From contig NC_043005.1 of the NCBI RefSeq assembly GCF_006345805.1, positions 63,426,001 to 63,490,000 of the forward strand: a DNA stretch of 64,000 nt, written 5' to 3'. This document shows, in pieces, positions 3,071-62,613 of this stretch. The notes beneath the pieces are model-generated. The model was not told where the DNA came from. It did no database searches and was given only the letters and a program-made list of their open reading frames with translations. Every line of letters begins with the position of its first letter. The stretch's first letter is position 1. Both the position numbers and the translations under genes were made by a program. This stretch comes from Octopus sinensis (taxonomy: Eukaryota).

Positions 3071-4388
3071 ACTATATATATTTGTTATGCTTATCAAAAG
3101 ATATTTTTTTAAGAGAGATAGAGTTCTTTCGCCCTTGCATACATATTTCTACATGCTTATATCTTGGCATGAAAGATTATTCCACGAATTTTGATGACAA
3201 TCATATGTTTCACTAAGGCAACAATTATCTGATTTGTTAAATAACTGGTTATTCTTCAGTTCACATTCACGGAAGCAATATCTCATTTAAGCAATATAAG
3301 TATCAAACCTAAAGAATTCATCATGCAAAGAAACATCATAAACAATATGGATGAACACAATGGAAACATTACTGAAGAACTGAAGGAAAACAACATTTAG
3401 AAATAATGGAAATTCTACAGCACATTTTACTTGAAGTTTTCAATCTTAATTGCTATAAAATAGCAAAACAAGCTCTCTGTGAATAAAATGAAATTATATC
3501 AGAACAAACTTCACTCAGAGTTAAATAATTTCACAACAAAACTATTTACCAGCAAGTAATATTTGTATGCAAGATGAGAGTTGCTGATTGCAATAGTATT
3601 CCCCAAAGTGAGAACCATGCACAAATGGACACATTCCAATAAAGAGAAGATATATGCCAACAGCATTTATGATAGCATTTGTAAAAATGCATGATTCAAT
3701 CAGTCTCTATGTCACCTTACTGTAAGGCTGGTTATTCTCATTAAGGTTACAGTGACCATAGCAAAAGCTGTGATAATAAGTGTATGATGAGCTATGAAAG
3801 CAAAGTATACAAACAATTGAAAGGAATTCTAAATGAAATGTTTCAAGAAAACTATATCTAATTGGCATTGTTAAGGGACCAAAACAGTTGATGTTGATGG
3901 TAGTTAGCAATACAGGTGTGAATTATTTACAACAATCTAATATTCTTTTGTTACAATAAATAAACCTGACCCATTTGTATTCCTTTTCCATAATTGTTTA
4001 GCAGGAGAAGTAAACAAAATTCTCTCATTGATTTGGAGAACAGGAAGAAAAAAACATTGTTGATCTATAGAAGATCATCAGCTATGCAGTGGTGCAAATA
4101 AGTATTAAATGCACTTTACGCCATGCAAAATTGTAAAATAAAGTAGAAAATACATTGGGAGAAATCAGAGAAGAGAACTGTTGAATACAAATTGATCACT
4201 GTCAAACAAAATTTGAAAGTTGTCAGTGAGAAACTTTGTCAGCATAAAAATATTGCTGAAAGAAATGTAGTTGATTCTAATTTGGACACAAGGCCATCAA
4301 TTTTGAGAGGTAGTGGCTAGTCAATACCATCAACCACTACTGTTTGACCAGTACTTTAATTTATTGAGCTTTGTAGGAATTGATCTCA

Positions 4389-4816
4389 GCAGGATTTGAG
4401 TTCAGAATATAAAGAAATGTTAACCCTTGCAGGATTTGAGCTCAGAACATAAAGAAATGTTAACCCTTGCAGGATTTGAGCTCAGAATATAAAGAAACGT
4501 TGACTTCCGCAGGTTTTGAGCTTAGAATATAAAGAAACGTTGACTTCTGCAGGATTTGAGCTCAGAATATAAAGAAATGATAACCCTAGCAGGATTTGAG
4601 CTCAGAATATCAAGAAATGTTGACCTCTGCAGGATTTGAGCCCAGAATATAAAGAAATGTTAACCCTTGCAGGATTTGAGCTCAGAATATAAAGAAACGT
4701 TGACCTCTGCAGGATTTGAGCTCAGAATATAAAGAAATGTTAACCCTTGCAGGATTTGAACTCAGAATATAAAGAAATGTTGACCTCTGCAGGATTTGAG
4801 CTTGGAATATAAAGAA
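4389..4816. repeat. 40-bp minisatellite, ~10.7 copies, derived from a SINE family B segment
   Basis: Unit gcaggatttgagctcagaatataaagaaatgttaaccctt starts at 4389, 4429, ... 4789. It matches the ggcggaatttgaactcagaacgta segment of minus-strand SINE B and follows a degenerate SINE B body at ~4270-4388. Confidence 0.9.
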
Positions 4817-6334: not shown

Positions 6335-6957
6335 CAATGAGAGTGATGACGATGATGATGTTGATAATGACAACGACTATGATGATGATGATGACGATGA
6401 TTGTGGTGATGATGATGATGATAACGATGATAACGATGACGATGATGATGATTATTGTGATGGTGGTGGTGGTGATGGGAACAGTGATGATGATGATAAC
6501 GATGATGATGATGATTATTGTGATGGTGGTGGTAGTGGGAATAGTGATGATGATAATGAGGATAATGATTGTGATGATGGTGGTGGTGGGGATAGTGATG
6601 ATGATAATGAGGAGAATGATGATGATGACAGCGACGACAATGATGATGATGATTGTTATAGTAGCGGGGCAGTAATAGTGGTGGTGATGATGATGATGAT
6701 GTCAGTGACGACAATGATGATGATGACTATTATGGTAGTGGGGTAGTAATAGTGTTAGTGGTGGTGATGATGATGATGAGGATTGTGATGGTGATGGTGT
6801 GGTGGTGGGAATAGTGATGGTGATGATAATGAGGATAATGATGATGATGAGAGTGACGACAATGATGATGATTGTTATGGTAGTGGGGCTGTAATAGTGG
6901 TGGTGGTGATGATGATGAACATGATGATGACTACGATGACGATGACAATGACCACAG
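6335..6957. repeat. (GAT)n/(GGT)n compound repeat with higher-order internal duplications
   Basis: The motif gtgatggtggtggtg..gaatagtgatgatgataatgagga recurs; ~6567-6700 is repeated at ~6780-6920. Confidence 0.9.
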
Positions 6958-11484: not shown

Positions 11485-11545
<61 letters not shown>

Positions 11546-11708
11546 TACGACGGGCTTCTTTCAGTTTCTGTCTACCAAATCCACTCACAAGGCTTTGGTC
11601 AGCCCGAGGCTATAGTAGAAACACTTCCCCAAGGTGCCACACAGTGGGACTAAACCCGGAACCATGTGGTTGGTAAACAAGCTACTTACCACACAGCCAC
11701 TCCTGCAC
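11295..11708 (-). mobile_element. SINE family A
   Basis: Full-length reverse-complement copy with a long central (CA)(TA) tract. Confidence 0.9.
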
Positions 11709-11979
11709 CTATATATCTATATATTTATACATACATACACACACATATATACTCTGCTGTGTGGTTGGTGTTAGGAAGGGCATCCAGCTGTAAAAACTAT
11801 ACAAAGCATCAGAAGTCTGGTGCAGTTTTCTGCCTGGTCAGCTCCTGTCAAACCATCCACCCATGCCAGCATGAAAGGCAGACATTAAACAATGATGATG
11901 ATGATATATAAGTATGTATGTCTGAATGTATATACACATGCAACCATTTATATGTATGTGCATGTGTATTATGTGCATG

Positions 11980-12061
<82 letters not shown>

Positions 12062-12435
12062 TATATATATACATATATATATACATATTAGAGGGAAACC
12101 ACTATGTGGAAACCCTTATGCTAGAAATAGATCCGCTATGGTCTTACCACTAAGAAATGTTCAGAAGAAAAAAATTAGCAAAACAACCAAAATGTAATCG
12201 AGCAAGACAAAAGAAAAAGCAATAAAAATATGGATTATTCGCATACATGTTTCACTATTAACATATTACGTAATTTTACTTACATAAATGTCTGTAGATC
12301 ATCGGTGTAACCATCCAGATGAATATAATTTGCAGGACTGCATACTAGGAAATCCGCACAAAGTCAGATTTGTATACAGTTCTACTCTTAACACTCGTGG
12401 TTACTATTTCAGATACACACACACACACACACATA

Positions 12436-12474
<39 letters not shown>

Positions 12475-12909
12475 TACGACGGGCTTCTTTCAGTTTCTGT
12501 CTACCAAATCCACTCACAAGGCTTTGGTCAGCCCGAGGCTATAGTAGAAACACTTCCCCAAGGTGCCACACAGTGGGACTAAACCCGGAACCATGTGGTT
12601 GGTAAACAAGCTACTTACCACACAGCCACTCCTGCACCTATATATCTATATATTTATACATACATACACACACATATATACTCTGCTGTGTGGTTGGTGT
12701 TAGGAAGGGCATCCAGCTGTAAAAACTATACAAAGCATCAGAAGTCTGGTGCAGTTTTCTGCCTGGTCAGCTCCTGTCAAACCATCCAACCCATGCCAGC
12801 ATGAAAGGCAGACATTAAACAATGATGATGATGATATATAAGTATGTATGTCTGAATGTATATACACATGCAACCATTTATATGTATGTGCATGTGTATT
12901 ATGTGCATG

Positions 12910-12995
<86 letters not shown>

Positions 12996-13348
12996 TATAT
13001 ATATACATATATATATACATATTAGAGGGAAACCACTATGTGGAAACCCTTATGCTAGAAATAGATCCGCTATGGTCTTACCACTAAGAAATGTTCAGAA
13101 GAAAAAAATTAGCAAAACAACCAAAATGTAATCGAGCAAGACAAAAGAAAAAGCAATAAAAATATGGATTATTCGCATACATGTTTCACTATTAACATAT
13201 TACGTAATTTTACTTACATAAATGTCTGTAGATCATCGGTGTAACCATCCAGATGAATATAATTTGCAGGACTGCATACTAGGAAATCCGCACAAAGTCA
13301 GATTTGTATACAGTTCTACTCTTAACACTCGTGGTTACTATTTCAGAT

Positions 13349-13365
<17 letters not shown>
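11487..13365. repeat. Near-identical ~930-bp direct tandem duplication
   Basis: Anchors at 11548/12477, 12091/13025 and 12407/13341. Outside the microsatellites I see only a 1-bp indel. Breakpoints lie in (CA)n(TA)n tracts. Confidence 0.9.
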
Positions 13366-13379
<14 letters not shown>

Positions 13380-13717
13380 CCAATATACATTCAAATATAT
13401 ATGTATATACATATATGCTTATATGTATACATACACACACACACACACATATAGTTATATGTATATGTGTATATATGCCTGTTTCAGACATCTTTTGTTC
13501 AGTATATTTAATTATGTAATATTTGGCATGTTCAAATTCCATTCTTTGACTTTACATAAATAGAAAAGAAAAGAATTAATTTGCAATGGCAGCAAACTAA
13601 CAGAAACAGTAAAGTCTTCTTTTCATAGGTTATTAATCTATTCTTTGAGGATGGCGTGAATTATTTGAATTTCATGATCAAAGATATATCCAACAGGAGG
13701 TGATCACTGTTATTTAC

Positions 13718-13763: not shown

Positions 13764-14232
13764 CTGAAGGTGCCAAACACAGCAGAACAAGTAAATATAA
13801 CAATTATTGATTTTAAAGTACTTCATTGGCCGCAGTATGAAACCATTTCATTTATTTACCTGGGTTGTTTGAGAAGGTTTATGGATGCATTAATTGAGAA
13901 CCAGACAACAAGGCAATCATTTGGTAATTTTTATCCTATCACTACCATGATATTGTAGTCATGAGCAAGATATTTACTTTTTAGTGGCTGTGTCAATTTA
14001 AATTTGTGTAGGTACATTAATTTGGTATAATTCAGGAATATCACCTGTATTTCTATAGCTTAGTAGTAAATCATTTCATGTATTTCTCTCTGGGGCTTAC
14101 ATACAGCTAAGTAGACTGGAGTTTTTGGGCAGGCTTATGGCTGAATCAAGAGGGAAGCAGCTAACCAGCCAAGTATTTCATGATTTTTATATCACCACCA
14201 CCACCACCACCACCACCACCACCAGCCATCCA

Positions 14233-14420
14233 AGAATTTGGACCTGGAGATCTCCATTTCCAGTGACTTCGATGGCCACCTCCCAGTGGTGTTGGGCGTC
14301 AATGAAGAGCCCTCGACAATAACAAGACAACTAAAGTTTTTTTTTTCCAAGGTCTGGGGTCTCCCGCCCCCTAAGCCCTAGACCATCACCTAATCACCCT
14401 TACCTGTCTTGTTACTTAAC
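14233..14420. other. Unclassified ~185-nt structured dispersed element, copy 1
   Basis: First 85 nt match 16274-16358 at 82/85 positions; multiple internal stems; flanked by (CAC)n and (CAA)n. Confidence 0.8.
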
Positions 14421-14859
14421 AACAACAATAACCACTACCAACAACAACAACACTCTACTGTGCAGGTGGCAAGTTATTTAACATAGAGTGGTATAATATA
14501 TTAAGGCAGTGGTTGCAGTGTGGGATTCGTATGCAACATGTTTTTTTGGTATACATGTCAACACAGTGTAAACATGTGGTGTAAGCAATCAAAAATTGTC
14601 ACTATCTTTCCGTCTTGGTATATAAATTAACCTGTGTTGTTTGGCTGCATATTTTGGCCAGAAAATTTCAAATGTATGCCAGAAAATACAATAATTTTCT
14701 GGCTTGAATTGAATTACTGATATAAGGAATACATCAGAGATCTACCCAAGGTGAGATTGATCTCTCAGTTGCTTGATGTATTGGATATCAGAAATAAAGA
14801 CCTGTGGGATTTTGAAAATTGCTTCGCAAGACACTTGAGAGTTAATAATTTTGGCTATT

Positions 14860-15195
14860 GGGTTAGGCCACCCTTTGGTCATAAATGACCATGGGATTGC
14901 ACCTTGAAAGTTCTCCTCCAAGGCACAAGTCCAGGCAAAAGTTGTTTATGGAAGACCAGCAGTCACCCTAACATAGCAGCCTTCCTTCTCTGTGCCACCA
15001 ATATTATCCAAAGGAAAGGTAAAGGCCAATACAGCTTGGCATCAGTGACATCGCTGCTCATTTCTACAGCTAGGTGAACTGGAGCAGCGTGAAGTAAAGA
15101 GTGTTGCTCAAGAACACAACACAGCCTGGTCTGGGAATCAAACTTACAACCTCATGATTGTGAGTGAGCCAAACGCTCTAACCACTGAGCCTTCA
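14860..15195 (-). mobile_element. tRNA-derived SINE family E
   Basis: Ends in ctctaaccactgagcc (reverse-complement A box); body ggtcataaatgaccatgggattgcacc is shared with 34668 and 5628. Confidence 0.8.
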
Positions 15196-16273
15196 ATCTG
15201 TCAAATCATTATTGGATAATTATCGATCAATTATCTATTGAATTCGGACCTAAGACCAACAGTCTAAATACTTAAGAAAATTTGCTTTTTGTCCCTCTAT
15301 ATTTTTATTTAAACTCTTTGTTGACCGAGTCACTACTTTCCATTTAGTACATCTGGAGTTCAATGAAATAGCTATCTATATGTTACTTCATCCTGTTGTT
15401 AGTGTTGTTGTTATGGTGATATTTTACATCTTTATTTCATTTTAATATGTTAGAAACACTGCAGCTATTTGGCTGCAACACAATTTCATTGCATGCCACC
15501 TTGTTTGATGGCTGAAATTTTATTTTGTTTGGAAACATTAAAATCTCAGCTATTCATGTGTTTTCAAATCAAAAATAAAATTCCACCCATCAAGCAAAGG
15601 AGGCTGCAATGGGAATGCATAGTGTTCAAGTGGTTTCAATAATTATAACACGTGAAAGCTGAAATGAGCCATGAATTTCACAATAGTGCTATGCCATGAT
15701 TATAATCAAAACACTTAACACCCAAATGCTGAATCTGTATAACTATGAATTGACAAAACTATGGTGTATAGTTCACCCACGAACAGATTAAGTGTAATTG
15801 ACAATCTAAGCACAGCTCCAAGGAATCTTGAATTTTTTTTCTCTAACAAGTAAAGCATTAAAATATTATGTGCTGAAAGAAACAATAAAAAATTCAGTTT
15901 TTATTCCAGGCTGCCTTCAAGGCAATACCCCACAACTATGTTCAATATATTTTAAATTTTATTTATCTAAACACTAAATAACAGAAAGTAATATAGGAAG
16001 ATTATTTACATACAACCAAAGCAACATGGAAAAATTTTCAACACTTATCTGTTGATCACTGGTTGAGCTGCAGTATTCCCTTCATTGTAAATCATACAAC
16101 TTGCAAAAGCTCTGTGATGCTTCCTTCTCTTGGTGCTCTAAGCATGTACTCACTTTGCTAAATGGTTACTTTAGGTTTACTAAGCTACTGCAATACTGTA
16201 AAATTTGACTAGTGATTTCTGAGCTTGCACCACCAGCACCATCATCATCATCAGCAGCAGCAGCAGCAATTCC

Positions 16274-16458
16274 AGAATTTGGACCTGGAGATCTCCATTT
16301 CCAGTGACTTCGAGGGCCACCTCCCAGTGGTGTCGGGCGTCAACGAAGAGCCCTCGACTATAAGATGACCAAAGTTTTTTTTTTTCCCAAGGTCTGGGGT
16401 TTTCCGCCCCTAAGCCCTAGATTATCATCTAATCGCCCTTACCCATCTTGTTGCTCAA
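16274..16458. other. Unclassified ~185-nt structured dispersed element, copy 2
   Basis: Direct-orientation homologue of 14233-14420; flanked by (CAT)(CAG)n and (CAA)(CAG). Confidence 0.8.
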
Positions 16459-17510
16459 CAACAGCAGCATCACTACCACCATCAATACCATTACTGCCTC
16501 AGCAGCAATAGCATTTACTTTTCCGTGTAGTGTAAATTGGATAGTTTCTTTGAGGCAGTGATTTATGGAAGAATGTTCATCCTATAGCCATCCCTTTTAG
16601 CCACTTCTTACATCAAGGAGGAATGCCTACTTCTCTCAAGTTTTCATCACAATGCAGTGTGCAAATTTTCTTTGCTCAGATAACTGATAATCCATTCTTA
16701 TAAAAAGAAGCAAGGTTAAATAATCCAATGTTTCAAAGAAAAGCAGTTACAAAAAAAAGACTAACAGAAACATTAGGGTCACTTTCATTACGTATACTCT
16801 ACCCATGACAAGAATTAGCCTTACATTTGAAGATACCAATATATTATTGAGCTAACTAAAGAATCTCTAAGTGATGATACAACCTGCTAGAAATTGCAGC
16901 TAATCTCTCTCAACCCACCACCTTCCATCTTAAAAAAGAGGAAACATTAGAGATAATAGTCAAAATATACTGTTTAGGGAAAAAAGGCAGGAATATAATA
17001 GTTTGAATGTCTTTGGTCATAAGTTTGTTGAGAGCTGATATGGCTCTAAACAACAACAACAACAACAACAGCAGCAGCAAGGAGATTAAGATCTTTATAT
17101 AAGTTTACTTTTCCTGTTTACATAAACCTTATCTGGTGTGTCATGGATTTCCAGAATTTTAGGAAATACTTTTGAAGTGGCAGCATTTTCTAAAATTTCT
17201 GATTGCATGCTTAAATAATTAGATGAGGCTTTAAAGCTGTTTGACATTGAAATCTTTTCTGCCATTTACAACTCACATCATCTCATGGCATAACAACAAG
17301 ATCTGCTTGAATTTTTTCCAGTTTATTCTATTCATTCTAAAGTTAATATTATTCTCCTTTAATTACCAAACACGAGCTGTTGTTTTTTCTTGTAATGAAG
17401 GAAGTACTGTGCATCTGTGCTTGAAACTTGTATCATCTTTCTTCCATTCCTACATAGCATTTGGTATTAGTTCATCTGTTTAGATGGGTAGGGTAAGATG
17501 TCTATCTTTT

Positions 17511-17689: not shown

Positions 17690-18030
17690 TGAACCTTATG
17701 AAGGAGATGATAGAGGACCAAAATATATGGCTCGTTGTTGTGCTCAAGAAGACCTCCCCTCTACAACAGAATTGAGATCCTAAAACCAAGGTGTCACATA
17801 AAAAGCCTTGGTGTGATTGCTGGTGTCACATAAAAAGCACTGATGCTGGTACCACATAAAAGGCATTTGTGATTGTGCCACATGAAAAACAACCAGTATA
17901 CTCTGTAAAGTGGTTGGTGTTAGAAAGGGGCATCCAGCTGTAGAAAACAGACTATGGAGCCTGGTGTGGCCCCTTGCCTTTCCAGTTCTTGTCAAGCCAT
18001 CCAACCCATGCCAGCTTGGAAACTGGATGT
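17690..18030 (+). mobile_element. RTE 3'-UTR-derived repeat (tandem ggcacataaaaagcac units plus tail)
   Basis: gtggttggtgttagaaaggggcatccagctgtagaaa...ccatccaacccatgccagc matches the 3' UTR of the RTE at 62250-62592. Confidence 0.75.
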
Positions 18031-19779: not shown

Positions 19780-20045
19780 ATGGCCAGTGCTAGTGACACA
19801 TAAGAGGAACCTGTACTGGTGACACATAAAAGCCACTCATGCCAGAGACACATAAAAGCACCTGGTACACTCTGTGAAGTGGTTGGCATTAGGAAGGGCA
19901 TGCACCTGTAGAAACCAAACCAAAACAGACTGGAGCCTGCTGCAGATTTCCAGCTTACCAATACCAGTTAAACCATCTAACCTATGCCAGCATGGAAATG
20001 ATGATGATGGTGGTGGTGTTGGTAGTGGTGATGACGATGACAATG
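19780..20045 (+). mobile_element. RTE 3'-UTR-derived repeat with (GAT)n tail
   Basis: Same motif set as 62250-62592. Confidence 0.75.
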
Positions 20046-29399: not shown

Positions 29400-29967
29400 A
29401 TTTTAAAATAATATGCCAGGGGTGTAACCAGCCCACTTATGCATACCTGGACACTAAACTCTGCTTGCAAAGACCTGTTGAGGCAAGTGAAATCGAAATC
29501 GAAATGAAATTCGATGACTGGCATCCGTGCTAGTGGAGCGCTAAGAGCACCATCGAGCGTGATCATTGCCAGAGTGGCCAACTGGCTTCCATGCTGGTGG
29601 CACGTAAAAAGCACCATTCGAGTGTGATCATTACCAGTGTCGCCTTACTGGCACATGGAAAAACATTTGAGTGAGGTCATTGCCAGTGCCGCCAGACTGG
29701 ATCCTGTGCAGGTGGCATGTAAAAAACACAATTTGAGTATGGCTATTGCCAGTACCACCTGACTGGTCCTCATGCCAGTAGCACGTAAAAGCACCCACTA
29801 CACTCTCAGAGTGGTTGGCGTTAGGAAGGGCATCCAGCTGTAGGAACTCTGTCAGATCAAGATTGGAGCCTGGTGCAGCCATCTGATTCACCAGTCCTCA
29901 GTCAAATCGCCCAACCTATGCTAGCATGGAAAGCAGACGTTAAACGATGATGATGATGATGATGATG
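29400..29967 (+). mobile_element. RTE 3'-UTR-derived repeat with tandem ggcacgtaaaaagcacc units and (GAT)n tail
   Basis: Four to five ~50-bp units, then ctctcagagtggttggcgttaggaagggcatccagc...aaacgatgatgat. Confidence 0.8.
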
Positions 29968-36044: not shown

Positions 36045-36303
36045 TGATTTCAGTAGTGCCTCGTGCCGGTGGCACGTAAAAAGCACCATCTGTTCGTGGC
36101 CATTGCCAGCGTCGCCTGGCCCTTGTGCCGGTGGCACATAAAAAGCACCATCCGATTGTGACCGTTTGCCAGACTCGTCTGGCACCTGTGCCAGTGGCAC
36201 AGATCAGACTGGGCCTGGTGCAGCCTTCTGGCTCCCCAGACCCCAGTTGAACCGTCCAACCCATGCTAGCATGGAAAGCGGACGCTAAACGATGATGATG
36301 ATG
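36045..36303 (+). mobile_element. RTE 3'-UTR-derived repeat, CpG-retaining (young)
   Basis: gtgccggtggcacgtaaaaagcacc units plus aaacgatgatgatgatg tail. Confidence 0.8.
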
Positions 36304-36696
36304 AATCCCTGTGCTCAACTGGTGCTTATTTTATTAACCCTGAAAGGATGAATGGCAATGTTAACCTTGATGACTTTTGTACTCAATACATAAAACTAAA
36401 AGAAATGTCTCTAAGCAATTTTACTAGCAAGGTAGTGTTCCTGCTTAGTCTCCAGTTCATCAGCCTATTAGTTAACAAGCTTATTTTCTAAATTCTTCAT
36501 TATTTTAAAACTTATTAGACATAGAAGTAGTGTATTTTAGCAGAAATATGGTAACAAAATGGTTAAGGAGTAAAAGACAAGACTGAAAAACTTCCAGTAT
36601 GAAAGTGGATTTGTCCAGCAGTGGACTGGTACATTTTGTCTTTAACTTTTTACCCTTTATGTATGAACATATGTATGTGTGTGTATATATATGTAT

Positions 36697-55081: not shown

Positions 55082-55216
55082 AAGATTTGATGACACAGAA
55101 CTGACCTGGCTAGCAAATGCTAGCATGGAAAGTCAAATGTTAGAATGATTTATTGTTGTTGATGATGATGATATGTGAGTTTTACGATGGTTGCAAATGC
55201 ACAAGTGATTCAAGTC
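55082..55216 (+). repeat. Left arm of a 135-bp near-perfect inverted duplication
   Basis: Reverse complement of 56436-56570; I see two substitutions. Confidence 0.9.
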
Positions 55217-56435: not shown

Positions 56436-56570
56436 GACTTGAATCACTTGTGCATTTGCAACCATTGTAAAACTCACATATCATCATCATCATCAACAAT
56501 AAATCATTCTAACATTTGACTTTCCATGCTAGCATTTGCTAGCCAGGTCAGTTCTGTGTCATCAAATCTT
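56436..56570 (-). repeat. Right arm of a 135-bp near-perfect inverted duplication
   Basis: gacttgaatcac...gtcatcaaatctt is the reverse complement of 55082-55216. Confidence 0.9.
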
Positions 56571-57373: not shown

Positions 57374-57772
57374 GAGTGGCTGTGTGGTAAGTAGCTTGCT
57401 TAACAACCACATGGTTCCAGGTTCAGTTCCACTGCGTGGCACCATGGGCAAGTGTCTTCTATTATAGCTTTGGGCTGACCAAAGCCTTGTGAGAGGATTT
57501 GGTAGACGGAAACTGAAAGAATCCCATCGTATATATATATTTATATATATGTATGTATATGTTTGCGTGTCTGTGTTTGTCCCCCCAACATCGCTTGACA
57601 ACTGATGCTGGTGTGTTTACGTCCCCATAACTTAGTGGTTCAGCAAAATAAACTAATAGAATAAGTACTAGGCTTACAAAGAATAAGTCCTGGGGTTGAT
57701 TTGCTCGACTAAAGGCAGTGCTCCAGCATGGCCACAGTCAAATGACTAAAACAATTAAAAGAGTAAAGAGTA
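57374..57772 (+). mobile_element. SINE family A nested in an RTE 3'-UTR repeat (57260-57985)
   Basis: RTE-type ggtgccacataaaaa units on both sides of a full SINE A. Confidence 0.85.
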
Positions 57773-58893
57773 TGCTGCTGCCATGTTAAGAGAGCACTAG
57801 TGCTGGTGCCACATAAAAAACACCCAGTACATTCTGTGGAGTAGCAGGCATTAGGAAGGGTATCCAGTCATAGAAACCATGCCAGAACTGACAATCAAGC
57901 CTGGTGCAACCATGGCCTTACCAGTTCTGGTCAAACCGTCCAACCAATGCCAGCATAGAAAACAGACTTCAAATAATGATGATGACTGCTCTGCCACTTA
58001 AGTTGGGAGTCATTTGATTCTCTTGAAGAACAATCCTAGTAATATCAACTATTATTACACTTTGGACCTTTATTTAATTGAAATTTGGTCTCATGTGGTA
58101 AAAACAACAGTTGTTTCCTAGCCAAGATATGAAAATGGTATTACAATTGGGAGTTGGCAATAGATTGGAGTAATCAGGGAAAAGTAAATAATTGAATAAA
58201 ATCACTAGAATTTCAGAAACATATTGGCCAGTATTGACAGGAGACATACCGGAAAAGAAAAAAATAATATTGTGAGAGTACTGGAGAGAGAAATAGCTAA
58301 TACTTTAGATAAACATAGAGAAGTAGGGTTTGCTTGAAACAATACATTATATAATTTCTCTCCTTATACCTATACCATAATTGTGTGTTTTGCTGACACA
58401 GGCAATGATTTTGTAAATTTTGTATAAGTAACTTGGGCAGTATTTTGTTAAAATAGACATTCATGAACCATAGTTAATACATACACATTGTTACGGGCAA
58501 GTTGCTGTAGTATTTGTCTTGAAGTAACATCTCATATGGATTGTGTTAAAAGCACAATAAATATCCAAGTGAGACAAAAATTTCTCCCACCAATAACTAG
58601 CAAAAACACCAGATTCATGACAGTGTGTATACATTGAGTATGATACATAGGTGGCTATTTTAATTAAATACTGCTTGAATTGCACATACCAAATTTTAAA
58701 TCAGCCAAGCAATTATTTGCCATATCAGTGGATGTTTTATTCAATTTTTCCTTTATAAGAAATGATGAATTCCCATTATAGCATGTGGCTAGCTGCAAGT
58801 AGGTATCATTGAAAAGGCCCAAAAAGTGTATCTGATATGCTTGTTAGCTACTGCTGGGACAAATTGTCATCTCTCTCTAGTATTTATTGATTT

Positions 58894-61077: not shown

Positions 61078-62592
61078 GTGCGGAAACTGGGGATTAGTGA
61101 ATGGTTAATAAGGGCTGTACAAGCCCTATACAGAGAGGACGTTGGTAAGGTTAGGATTGGCAGAAAGTATAGTACAGAATTCCGAGTAGAAGTAGGGGTC
61201 CACCAAGGTTCAGCCCTCAGCCCCCTTTTATTCATTATAGTCCTCCAGGCAATAACAGAGGAATTCAAGACAGGTTGCCCCTGGGAGCTCCTTTATGCTG
61301 ATAACCTGGCCCTCATAGCAGAATCACTACCAGAAATAGAGAAGAAATTTCAGATGTGAAAGCAAGGTTTAGAATCAAAAGGCCTTAGAGTCAATGTATG
61401 GAAGACCAAAGTTCTAGTAAGTAGGAAGGCAAACACATCACACACACCCTCAGGTAGGTGGCCCTACTCGATCTGTAGAAAAGGTGTGGGTAGAAACTCC
61501 ATAAGATGTACCCAGTGAAAGCTGTGGACACATAAGAGGTGCTGCAACATCAAAGGAAGATTAACTGAAAAGATAGCTTTTGTGTGCAGCAGATGCACAG
61601 GGGCAATAAACACCACTGATACTCAGAAAACAGATTCCATCACATTACAGGGGGAGAAACTAGTAGTTGATAGCTTCCGCTATCTTGATGACCAAGTTAG
61701 TAGTGGGGGTGGATGCTCAGAGAGTGTTACCACTAGAATAAGAATAGCCTGGGCAAAGTTTAGAAAGCTTCTACCACTATTGGTAACAAAGGGCCTCTCG
61801 TTCAGAGTGAAAGATAGATTGTACGATGCATGTATGCAAACTGCCATACTTCACGGCAGTAAAACATGGGCCATGGCTGCAGAGGAAATGCGTAGGCTTG
61901 AAAGAAATGAAGCTAGCATGATCCGCTGGATGTGTAATGTCAGTGTGCACACACGACAGAGTGTAAGCGCCCTGAGAGAAATGTTGGACATAAGAAACAT
62001 TGGATGTGGCATGCAAGAGAGACGTCTGTGCTGGTATGGTCACGTACTATGGATGGATGAGGAGAGCTGTGTGAAGAAGTGCCACTCTCAAAAAGTTGAA
62101 GGAATCTGGAGTAGAGGTAGACCCAGGAAGACATGGGATAAAGTGGTGAAACATGACCTTCAAACGTTGGGCCTCACAGTGGCAATGACAAAAGGCCGAG
62201 ACATCTGGAGATATGCTGTGACTGCAAAAATCTGGCAAATAAAGTGAGTTCATGGCTGTGTCCTACACCAATTTCGCATAACCAGCCCCAACCTATTCAA
62301 AAGCACCTTAGATTGTAGGGCGACCTGCTGTGCTTGAGGAGATCTATTGAGTCAATACATCAACATCAAAATGAAAATCAAATGGAAATTATAGTTGTGA
62401 TACATGTGCTAGTGGCACATAAAAAGCAGCCACTACACTCATGGAGTGGTTGGCGTTAGGAAGGGCATCCAGGTGTAGAAACACTGCCAGATCAGATTGG
62501 AGCCTGGTGCAGCATTCTGGCTTCCCAGACCCTGGTCAAACCATCCAACCCATGCTAGCATGGAAAGCGAACATTAAACGATGATGATGATG
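61078..62592 (+). mobile_element. 5'-truncated RTE-clade LINE: RT C-terminal half, Cys-rich insert, C-terminal region, 3' UTR and (GAT)n tail; inactive
   Basis: GVHQGSALSPLLF (RT motif), LLYADN (YADD mutated), GLRVNVWKTK, FRYL, RIAWAKFR, RGRPRKTW; ORFs 61078-61359 and 61582-62247 share a frame separated by in-frame stops. Confidence 0.92.
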
Positions 62593-62613
62593 GTATATAT
62601 ATGTATATAATAG

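What the first reader, a model, noticed from the sequence alone, without database searches (positions are those of the whole stretch)
14233..16458. Twin ~185-nt highly structured unclassified element embedded in trinucleotide microsatellites
Seen: two direct copies 2 kb apart (14233-14420, 16274-16458), unrelated to the SINE families in the window, each flanked by (CAC/CAG)n on the left and (CAA)n on the right. The first 85 nt differ at only 3 sites. Stems present: tccag/ctgga; palindrome tggagatctcca; tcgagggc/gccctcga enclosing ccac-ctccca-gtgg; a T10-11 run; ggtctrggg/ccctagacc; and an outer aaga(ca|tg)/(tg|ca)tctt pairing that stays complementary in both copies. Opposite-strand CpG decay could also produce that last pattern. 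The minus strand carries G-tracts (aaggg..ctagggcttagggggcggg) and a 5' splice-site-like ag|gtaagg. Inference: a small structured RNA or ribozyme-bearing, microsatellite-targeting non-autonomous retroelement, or a Pol III-type ncRNA ending at the T-run.
Basis: partly seen in the sequence, partly recalled or inferred. Interest (0 to 1): 0.7.

Follow-up and report, generated by a model that had tools for sequence, protein, structure and literature searches.

The report
Twin unclassified 265-bp octopus repeat
Two copies, 2 kb apart, of a short non-coding repeat with trinucleotide-repeat ends lie in octopus DNA; it is most likely an ordinary unclassified mobile-element relic, and no test supported a ribozyme or structured RNA gene.

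Summary
The repeat is real. Two direct copies, A 14193-14460 and B 16234-16496, are sharply bounded, and the flanks beyond them align no better than chance. No third copy occurs in the window or in 21 kb of Octopus vulgaris DNA. Each unit runs (CAN)n tract, 86-nt GC-rich block, T10/T11 run, small foldback, (CAN)n tract.

The "highly structured RNA" reading does not hold. The conserved block folds no better than shuffles (z -0.03 and -1.15). The whole core gives only z -2.7 and -1.3. RNAalifold finds 0 compensatory pairs on the + strand. Rfam gives no ribozyme, tRNA or snRNA match even at E<=10. There is no B box and no hammerhead core. No reading frame has a homologue or a Pfam domain.

The host is an Octopus genome. 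A LINE/SINE 3' module present 8 times in the window ends in (GAT/GTG/TTG)n, which is the complement of the twin's (CAN)n tracts. The minus strand also lacks any T4 run. My best reading (confidence about 0.4) is a minus-sense, SINE-like non-autonomous retroposon with a trinucleotide tail. Genome-wide copy number could not be tested because no octopus genome can be searched by DNA here. Interest is low.

The parts
14193..14460 (-). Repeat unit, copy A (268 nt, 49% GC in a roughly 36% GC window). The strand given is the inferred sense strand and is not proven.
   Evidence: Local alignment boundaries; flanks at chance; GC content.
16234..16496 (-). Repeat unit, copy B (263 nt).
   Evidence: B retains more CpG than A in the core (7 vs 4).
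14193..14225 (.). Copy A left trinucleotide tract, (CAC)10 CAG. It reads CTG(GTG)10 on the minus strand and is the putative 3' tail.
   Evidence: TRF; regex scan.
16228..16269 (.). Copy B left tract, CACCACCAGCAC(CAT)4(CAG)5CAA. It reads TTG(CTG)5(ATG)4GTGCTGGTGGTG on the minus strand.
   Evidence: nhmmer aligns it to the tail of the LINE/SINE 3' module.
14233..14318 (.). Best-conserved GC-rich block, copy A (4 differences in 86 nt; 54% GC). It contains the palindrome TGGAGATCTCCA at 14245-14256.
   Evidence: It is not more stable than shuffles.
16274..16359 (.). Best-conserved block, copy B (57% GC). The palindrome lies at 16286-16297.
14337..14346 (+). T10 run (A10 on the minus strand).
16375..16385 (+). 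T11 run (A11 on the minus strand).
14320..14414 (.). Foldback module, copy A. The outer 10-bp inverted repeat is TAACAAGACA (14320-14329) / TGTCTTGTTA (14405-14414). The inner stem is GGTCTGGGG (14351-14359) / CCCTAGACC (14376-14384).
   Evidence: Fold z -4.5 on the + strand and -2.7 on the - strand.
16362..16449 (.). Foldback module, copy B. The outer stem is AAGATG (16362-16367) / CATCTT (16444-16449). The inner stem is GGTCTGGGG (16391-16399) / CCCTAGATT (16415-16423).
   Evidence: Fold z -1.95 on the + strand and -2.3 on the - strand.
14418..14460 (.). Copy A right tract, degenerate (AAC)n ... CACTACCA ... TACTG. It is part of the unit and partly aligns with the tract in B.
16456..16496 (.). 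Copy B right tract, CAACAACAGCAGCATCACTACCACCATCAATACCATTACTG.

Best explanation
The twins are two copies of a discrete, non-coding, roughly 265-bp dispersed repeat of an Octopus genome. It is most likely a SINE-like non-autonomous retroposon whose sense strand is the window's minus strand: 5'-(TTG)n-like tract, small foldback, A10-11 linker, 86-nt GC-rich block, (NTG)n tail-3'.

Proposed mechanism: a transcript of a master copy is reverse-transcribed by a LINE enzyme that recognises or primes on trinucleotide-repeat 3' tails. Insertion therefore occurs in or next to existing (NTG)n tracts, which leaves trinucleotide repeats on both sides.

Shown: the copies are discrete, sharply bounded, non-coding and unrelated to other families. 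The host is Octopus. A LINE/SINE 3' module of this genome carries (GAT/GTG/TTG)n tails. The minus strand has no T4 run.

Inferred: the orientation, retroposition as the copying mechanism, the LINE partner, and that more copies exist in the genome.
For: - Sharp boundaries at both ends, with unrelated flanks, fit a transposed unit rather than a segmental duplication.
- If the 2-kb period had been duplicated as a whole, flanks at about 90% identity would be easy to detect. None are seen.
- The host is Octopus. The RT ORF has its best named hits in O. bimaculoides and O. vulgaris, and the window shares SINE/LINE families with the O. vulgaris chromosome locus L001 at 80-95% identity.
- A LINE/SINE 3' module occurs 8 times in the window and directly follows the RT-bearing LINE at 61079-62399. 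It ends ...CATGGAAAGCAGACGTTAAAC(GAT)n, with tail variants ATG, GTG and TTG. These are the complement of the twin's (CAN)n tracts, and nhmmer aligns that tail to the minus strand of copy B.
- The minus strand of both copies has no run of four or more T. The + strand is interrupted by T10/T11.
- Literature: octopus RTE LINEs carry a microsatellite 3' UTR (PMC9115989). O. vulgaris has 893 recently active 'unclassified SINE' families plus active Dong-R4 LINEs (PMC13282606).
- There is no coding signal: no homologue in a word search; an exhaustive phmmer against 1.84 billion representatives gave only two spurious tandem-repeat hits; Pfam found no credible domain (only Ca_hom_mod at E 0.11, 12 bits against a cutoff of 25).
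Against: - Only two copies are seen, and they are 2 kb apart in the same orientation. No copy occurs in the other roughly 83 kb examined. A multi-copy family is therefore not demonstrated.
- There is no tRNA, 5S, 7SL or snRNA head, no B box, and only a chance-level A-box-like match.
- The body adjacent to the tail shows no detectable similarity to the LINE/SINE 3' module of the window, so no LINE partner is identified.
- No target-site duplication could be read at the microsatellite ends.
- The tail motifs are mostly GTG and CTG, whereas the known module's tail is mostly GAT.
Confidence: 0.4

Rival explanations
1. A cut-and-paste or rolling-circle DNA element (MITE-like or Helitron/Helentron-derived) that carries subterminal microsatellites, as in mollusc 'pearl'/DTC84-type elements. 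The second copy arose by local hopping.
For: The copies are close together and in the same region, which fits local transposition. The unit contains an internal foldback with a 10-bp inverted repeat flanked by TA in copy A, z -4.5. Boundaries are sharp. A 135-nt, 99% inverted-repeat pair nearby hints that inverted-repeat, possibly DNA-transposon-like, elements occur in this window.
Against: The unit ends (CACCACCA... and ...TACTG) are not inverted repeats of each other, by my reading. I could read no TSD. There is no 5'-TC...CTRR-3' at the ends on either strand. The TA flanks and the long inverted repeat are degraded in copy B.
Confidence: 0.15
2. A non-mobile local duplication. A 265-bp segment was copied once, for example by repair synthesis or template switching between trinucleotide tracts, and has since diverged neutrally for about 13 My.
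For: Only two copies are seen in 85 kb. The region is duplication-prone: a 930-bp tandem duplication at 96-98% identity lies just upstream at 11485-13416. With substitutions alone, divergence is not significantly heterogeneous (p=0.07). The overall JC distance is 0.093.
Against: The 1.78 kb between the copies and the sequence after copy B share nothing, so this is not a tandem duplication of the period. A dispersed 265-bp copy with clean ends is more simply explained by transposition.
Confidence: 0.2
3. The two units are LTR-like terminal direct repeats of a single roughly 2.3-kb non-autonomous element (TRIM/LARD, or pseudo-LTRs of a decayed Penelope-like element).
For: They are direct repeats of similar size, about 2 kb apart. 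Penelope-like and LTR elements are abundant in octopus (PMC13282606).
Against: The units lack TG...CA termini. There is no PBS-like TGG plus GC-rich stretch after copy A, and no polypurine tract before copy B (my reading). No TSD is visible. The interior has no ORF of 90 aa or more and no Pfam hit among its seven ORFs of 45 aa or more. There is no hammerhead motif.
Confidence: 0.06
4. A functional RNA: a roughly 105-nt Pol III transcript ending at the T-run, or a self-cleaving ribozyme module.
For: The best-conserved 86-105 nt are followed by T10/T11 in both copies. Several C/T differences would be G-U-compatible on the + strand.
Against: The block folds no better than shuffles. There are no compensatory pairs on the + strand. 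No Rfam family matches at E<=10 apart from sub-threshold bacterial chance hits. There is no B box and no conserved upstream promoter. Copy A has an uncompensated stem mismatch.
Confidence: 0.05
5. A duplicated coding exon, for example in the + frame ...NLDLEISISSDF[DE]GHLPVV... preceded by poly-His/Gln.
For: Three of the six frames are open across the conserved block.
Against: The tested + frame has no homologue, and Pfam gave no credible domain for the five peptides scanned, which cover the three open frames. The three substitutions give D/E, L/S and one synonymous change, so there is no signal of purifying selection. The frame ends in stops at different places in the two copies. The splice-site-like strings are weak.
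Confidence: 0.02

Closest known systems
LINE-dependent SINEs and retroposons with microsatellite 3' tails (RTE-derived SINEs; Malik and Eickbush 1998; Tay et al. 2010, PMC2887409; octopus RTE-2_OV, PMC9115989)
   Same: The unit is short and non-coding, has discrete ends, and ends in a trinucleotide repeat of the same class, (NTG)n, as a LINE/SINE 3' module in the same window. Microsatellite 'families' with shared flanks are the known by-product of such elements.
   Different: There is no recognisable Pol III head. No 3' body similarity to the LINE module present here was detected. The unit has repeat tracts at both ends. Copy number is unknown.
Microsatellite-targeting R4/Dong-clade non-LTR retrotransposons and their non-autonomous derivatives (Dong at (TAA)n; Kibi, Koshi, Mino and Waldo at other repeats)
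   Same: The element is embedded in simple repeats on both sides. Dong-R4 is the most active LINE group reported in O. vulgaris (PMC13282606).
   Different: To my knowledge, no (CAN)n-specific lineage has been described. The left and right tracts differ in motif (CAC/CAG/CAT vs CAA). The right tract partly aligns between the two copies, so it behaves as part of the element rather than as the target.
Mollusc MITE-like modular elements that combine a repeat core with a microsatellite (pearl, CvA, DTC84; Helentron-associated). This is recalled from memory and was not tested.
   Same: The architecture is modular: a core plus a microsatellite, in a mollusc genome.
   Different: Those elements carry tandem core repeats and tetranucleotide microsatellites and have defined flanking arms. 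None of these features is seen here.
Drosophila mini-me and lepidopteran microsatellite-associated repeat families
   Same: A short dispersed element with a conserved core flanked by proto-microsatellites.
   Different: The sequences and hosts are unrelated. The resemblance is analogy only.

Membership tests
SINE (Pol III-transcribed, LINE-mobilised) | Head derived from tRNA, 5S, 7SL or snRNA, with an internal promoter (A and B boxes) | tested here: not met
   ARAGORN found nothing. Rfam has no tRNA, 5S, SRP or snRNA match at E<=10. There is no B box within 2 mismatches. The only A-box-like match is GGGCTTAGGGG on the minus strand with 2 mismatches, at a threshold that hits about once per 500 nt.
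SINE (Pol III-transcribed, LINE-mobilised) | No internal Pol III terminator on the sense strand | tested here: met
   This is met for the minus strand only, which has no T4 run. The + strand has T10/T11 in mid-unit.
SINE (Pol III-transcribed, LINE-mobilised) | 3' end shared with a partner LINE, or a LINE-type repeat tail | tested here: inconclusive
   The tail class (NTG)n matches that of the LINE/SINE module in the window. The body next to the tail shows no similarity to it.
SINE (Pol III-transcribed, LINE-mobilised) | Many dispersed copies with target-site duplications | not testable with these tools
   Only 85 kb of octopus DNA was reachable, and it holds 2 copies. Exact-pattern scans of the metagenome, prokaryote-genome and viral collections found nothing. 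TSDs are unreadable at the microsatellite ends.
Self-cleaving ribozymes (hammerhead, HDV-like, twister and others) | Match to the family's covariance model or its conserved catalytic core | tested here: not met
   No such family appears at E<=10 on 280-nt inputs or on the 2.5-kb region. CUGANGA is absent except at a (CTG)(ATG) microsatellite junction.
Structured ncRNA gene | Fold more stable than shuffled sequence, with compensatory substitutions | tested here: not met
   The conserved block gives z -0.03 and -1.15. There are 0 compensated pairs on the + strand and 1 on the - strand. Two sequences give almost no power.
LTR retrotransposon / TRIM | TG...CA termini, PBS after the 5' LTR, PPT before the 3' LTR, TSD | tested here: not met
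   From my reading, the units start CACC and end ACTG. There is no PBS-like or polypurine sequence at the inner borders. The interior has no domain remnant.
MITE / TIR DNA transposon | Terminal inverted repeats at the unit ends, flanked by a TSD | tested here: not met
   The unit ends are not inverted repeats. Only an internal 6-10-bp inverted repeat exists.
Helitron | 5'-TC ... hairpin ... CTRR-3' termini, with insertion between A and T | tested here: not met
   On neither strand do the ends read TC...CTRR. An internal hairpin followed by CTAA|T lies 70 nt inside the unit, not at its end.

The most novel reading that the evidence does not exclude
The 86-105-nt GC-rich block (14233-14336 and 16274-16374) is a cephalopod-specific functional element kept similar in two paralogous copies by selection or gene conversion. 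It could be a small Pol III transcript ending at the T-run, or a protein-binding regulatory module centred on the TGGAGATCTCCA palindrome. On this reading the microsatellite-rich remainder decays freely.
Probability: 0.05. Interest if true: 0.5.

Novelty: new member of a known kind. Interest (0 to 1): 0.15.

Why it matters
As it stands, this matters little. Octopus genomes are about two-thirds repeats and hold hundreds of unclassified SINE-like families, and this looks like one more of them.

It has modest value as an example of how trinucleotide-tailed retroposons could seed or occupy (CAN)n/(NTG)n microsatellites in cephalopods. That bears on the design of microsatellite markers and on repeat annotation.

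It would matter more only if the conserved block proved to be a transcribed, selected RNA. Nothing here indicates that.

Tried and rejected
- Rfam at gathering threshold on the whole window, and at E<=10 on the 2.5-kb region and on each unit, gave only sub-threshold chance hits. Both copies hit flg-Rhizobiales at 18.6-18.8 bits against a gathering score of 55. That repeated hit reflects only that the two copies are homologous to each other.
- tRNA scan: none found.
- Exact-pattern scans of the metagenome, GTDB-genome and viral contigs with three different patterns found 0 hits. These collections do not hold cephalopod genomes.
- I tested the coding hypothesis with a word-based search, an exhaustive phmmer and Pfam. 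The two phmmer hits, P0012 and P0013, are tandem-repeat proteins at 31-34% identity whose scores are inflated by summed repeats. I rejected them.
- I tried to sample more octopus DNA through exact-protein look-ups. Window ORFs are not on record. One O. vulgaris locus, L001, was obtained through an RT protein. A second RT search returned almost no further octopus proteins, so this route ended at 21 kb.
- A literature search for the element's sequence strings found 0 papers. A search for cephalopod microsatellite-associated elements found nothing specific.
- I looked for a degenerate third copy near the (CAA)7(CAG)3 tract at 17051-17080. It shares only a non-collinear 11-mer and GGAGAT/AGATCT, which I rejected as chance.
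- I tried by hand to lay a tRNA-like cloverleaf on the minus strand. No consistent acceptor or T arm emerged.
- CTCF-like and G-quadruplex readings of the block and of the minus-strand G-tracts: the motifs are incomplete, and the G-tracts are not conserved in copy B.

Full report
OBSERVATION. The two copies are real. blastn of either copy against the window finds only its twin (83.7% over 257 nt, E 1e-72). Everything else it finds is trinucleotide-repeat noise. Local alignment sets the unit at A 14193-14460 and B 16234-16496, an offset of 2041 bp. The right tracts share CACTACCA...TACTG. The 100 nt beyond each end align no better than random window segments, scoring 5 against a null median of 4. 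nhmmer run at maximum sensitivity with a two-copy profile finds no third copy in the window or in 21 kb of Octopus vulgaris DNA.

ANATOMY (+ strand).
- A (CAN)n tract comes first: A has (CAC)10CAG, and B has CAC CAC CAG CAC (CAT)4 (CAG)5 CAA.
- An 86-nt GC-rich block follows (14233-14318 and 16274-16359; 54-57% GC). It contains the palindrome TGGAGATCTCCA.
- About 18 nt of degenerate CAA-like sequence follows.
- Next is a T10 run in A and a T11 run in B.
- A foldback follows, with inner stem GGTCTGGGG/CCCTAGACC and an outer 6-10-bp inverted repeat.
- A degenerate (CAA/CAG)n tract ending in TACTG closes the unit.
The units are 49% GC in a window of about 36% GC.

DIVERGENCE. The core shows 25 differing columns: 13 transitions, 5 transversions and 7 indel columns. 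The 5' block has 4 differences in 86 nt. Two of them are CpG in B and TpG in A. The 3' part has 19 differences in 102 nt, which gives p=0.0035. The indels cluster around the T-run, however. With substitutions alone the contrast is 4/86 vs 12/97, p=0.07. The special conservation of the 5' block is therefore suggestive, not established. The overall JC distance is 0.093. Using the published octopus calibration (JC 0.09 to consensus = 25 My, PMC13282606), that puts the common ancestor at roughly 13 My.

STRUCTURE CLAIMS.
- Whole-core MFE z-scores are -2.7 and -1.3 on the + strand and -2.2 and -0.5 on the - strand.
- The conserved block, which is the candidate Pol III RNA, gives -0.03 and -1.15 on the + strand and +0.32 and -1.92 on the - strand. 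That is indistinguishable from shuffled sequence.
- Only the foldback module stands out, at -4.5 and -1.95 on the + strand.
- RNAalifold predicts different consensus folds on the two strands, with 0 compensated pairs on the + strand and 1 on the - strand.
In the best-scoring alignments the left arms are not in the same columns. Decay of a palindromic ACG...CGT pair explains the pattern, with roughly a 1 in 4 chance (my estimate).
- The TCGAGGGC/GCCCTCGA stem has an uncompensated mismatch in copy A.
For comparison, an unrelated 127-nt hairpin that lies between the copies reaches z -8.8.

KNOWN RNA FAMILIES AND PROMOTERS. Rfam gives nothing at gathering score. At E<=10 it gives no ribozyme, tRNA, 5S, SRP or snRNA match, whether the input is the 2.5-kb region or each 280-nt unit. 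ARAGORN finds no tRNA. There is no B box within 2 mismatches. The only A-box-like match is a 2-mismatch hit on the minus strand, at a threshold that hits about once per 500 nt. There is no hammerhead core.

CODING. Three frames are open across the block. The + frame peptide has no homologue in the word-indexed search. An exhaustive phmmer against 1.84 billion representatives returns only two tandem-repeat proteins at 31-34% identity, and their scores come from summed repeats. Pfam finds no credible domain. The 1.78-kb interval between the copies has no ORF of 90 aa or more and no domain remnant.

HOST AND CONTEXT. An RT ORF at 61585-62244 has its best named relatives in Octopus bimaculoides and O. 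vulgaris, at 69-77% identity. A fetched O. vulgaris chromosome locus (L001, OX597814.1) shares the window's SINE and LINE families at 80-95% identity. The window is therefore Octopus DNA.

A 3' module occurs 8 times in the window and directly follows the RT-bearing LINE body. It ends ...CATGGAAAGCAGACGTTAAAC(GAT)n, and its tails drift among ATG, GTG and TTG. These sense-strand (NTG)n tails are the complement of the (CAN)n tracts around the twin. nhmmer aligns the module's tail to the minus strand of copy B. The minus strand of both units has no T4 run, whereas the + strand is cut by T10/T11.

The literature agrees in kind. The octopus RTE 3' UTR is mostly microsatellite (PMC9115989). O. vulgaris has 893 recently active 'unclassified SINE' families and active Dong-R4 LINEs (PMC13282606).

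INTERPRETATION. Clean unit ends with unrelated flanks argue for transposition of a 265-bp unit. They argue against duplication of the 2-kb period, because flanks at about 90% identity would have been detected. The tail class and the absence of a minus-strand terminator make a minus-sense, LINE-mobilised, SINE-like retroposon the best reading. I hold it at about 0.4 for four reasons: the family's multiplicity is untested, no Pol III head exists, no LINE partner was found, and TSDs are unreadable.

The rivals are as follows.
- A single non-mobile local duplication (0.2). The region also holds a young 930-bp tandem duplication.
- A DNA-transposon or Helitron-derived modular element with local hopping (0.15).
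- LTR-like ends of one 2.3-kb element (0.06). TG/CA termini, PBS, PPT and coding remnants are all absent.
- An exon (0.02).

LIMITS. No tool here searches a cephalopod genome by DNA. Genome-wide copy number, a consensus sequence, TSDs, orthologous empty sites and expression all remain untested. They are listed as the decisive next steps.

VERDICT. This is a real but ordinary-looking unclassified short repeat. The claims of RNA structure, a ribozyme or a Pol III gene are not supported. Interest is 0.15.

Noticed in passing
window 15485-15611: A 127-nt near-perfect hairpin lies between the two copies. MFE is -50.5 kcal/mol, with z -8.8 on the + strand and -7.7 on the - strand. It has a weak sub-threshold match to mir-279 (27 bits against a gathering score of 56, E 0.015). 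It could be a MITE-like foldback or a pre-miRNA-like locus.
   Followed up: partly
window 11485-13416: A young tandem duplication with a period of about 930 bp and 96-98% identity, about 780 bp upstream of copy A. It contains SINE copies and (AT)n/(AC)n arrays.
   Followed up: no
window 55082-55216 and 56436-56570: A 135-nt inverted-repeat pair, 99% complementary, with 1219 nt between the arms. Each arm includes a (TTG)3(ATG)3 tract. It looks like the TIRs of a roughly 1.5-kb DNA element or a recent inverted duplication.
   Followed up: partly
window 11748-11876, 12677-12849, 17818-18022, 19788-20021, 29787-29967, 36215-36304, 57772-57985, 62402-62606: Eight copies of a LINE/SINE 3' module ending ...CATGGAAAGCAGACGTTAAAC(GAT)n. 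The tails drift to GTG and TTG. The last copy directly follows an RT-bearing LINE fragment at 61079-62399.
   Followed up: yes
window 6344-6947: A 600-nt (TGA)n-derived array with higher-order periods of 51-74 nt. It produces long Asp-rich and His-rich ORFs, and may be an expanded trinucleotide tail.
   Followed up: no
window 4380-4816: A tandem array of a 40/80-nt unit, 10.7 copies at 87-88% identity, with consensus GCAGGATTTGAGCTCAGAATATAAAGAAATGTTAACCCCT.
   Followed up: no
P0015: A protein labelled 'MAG: Herbaspirillum sp.' on a 1.5-kb contig is 69% identical to an Octopus vulgaris LINE reverse transcriptase. This is probably host-DNA contamination of a metagenome-assembled bacterial genome.
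   Followed up: no
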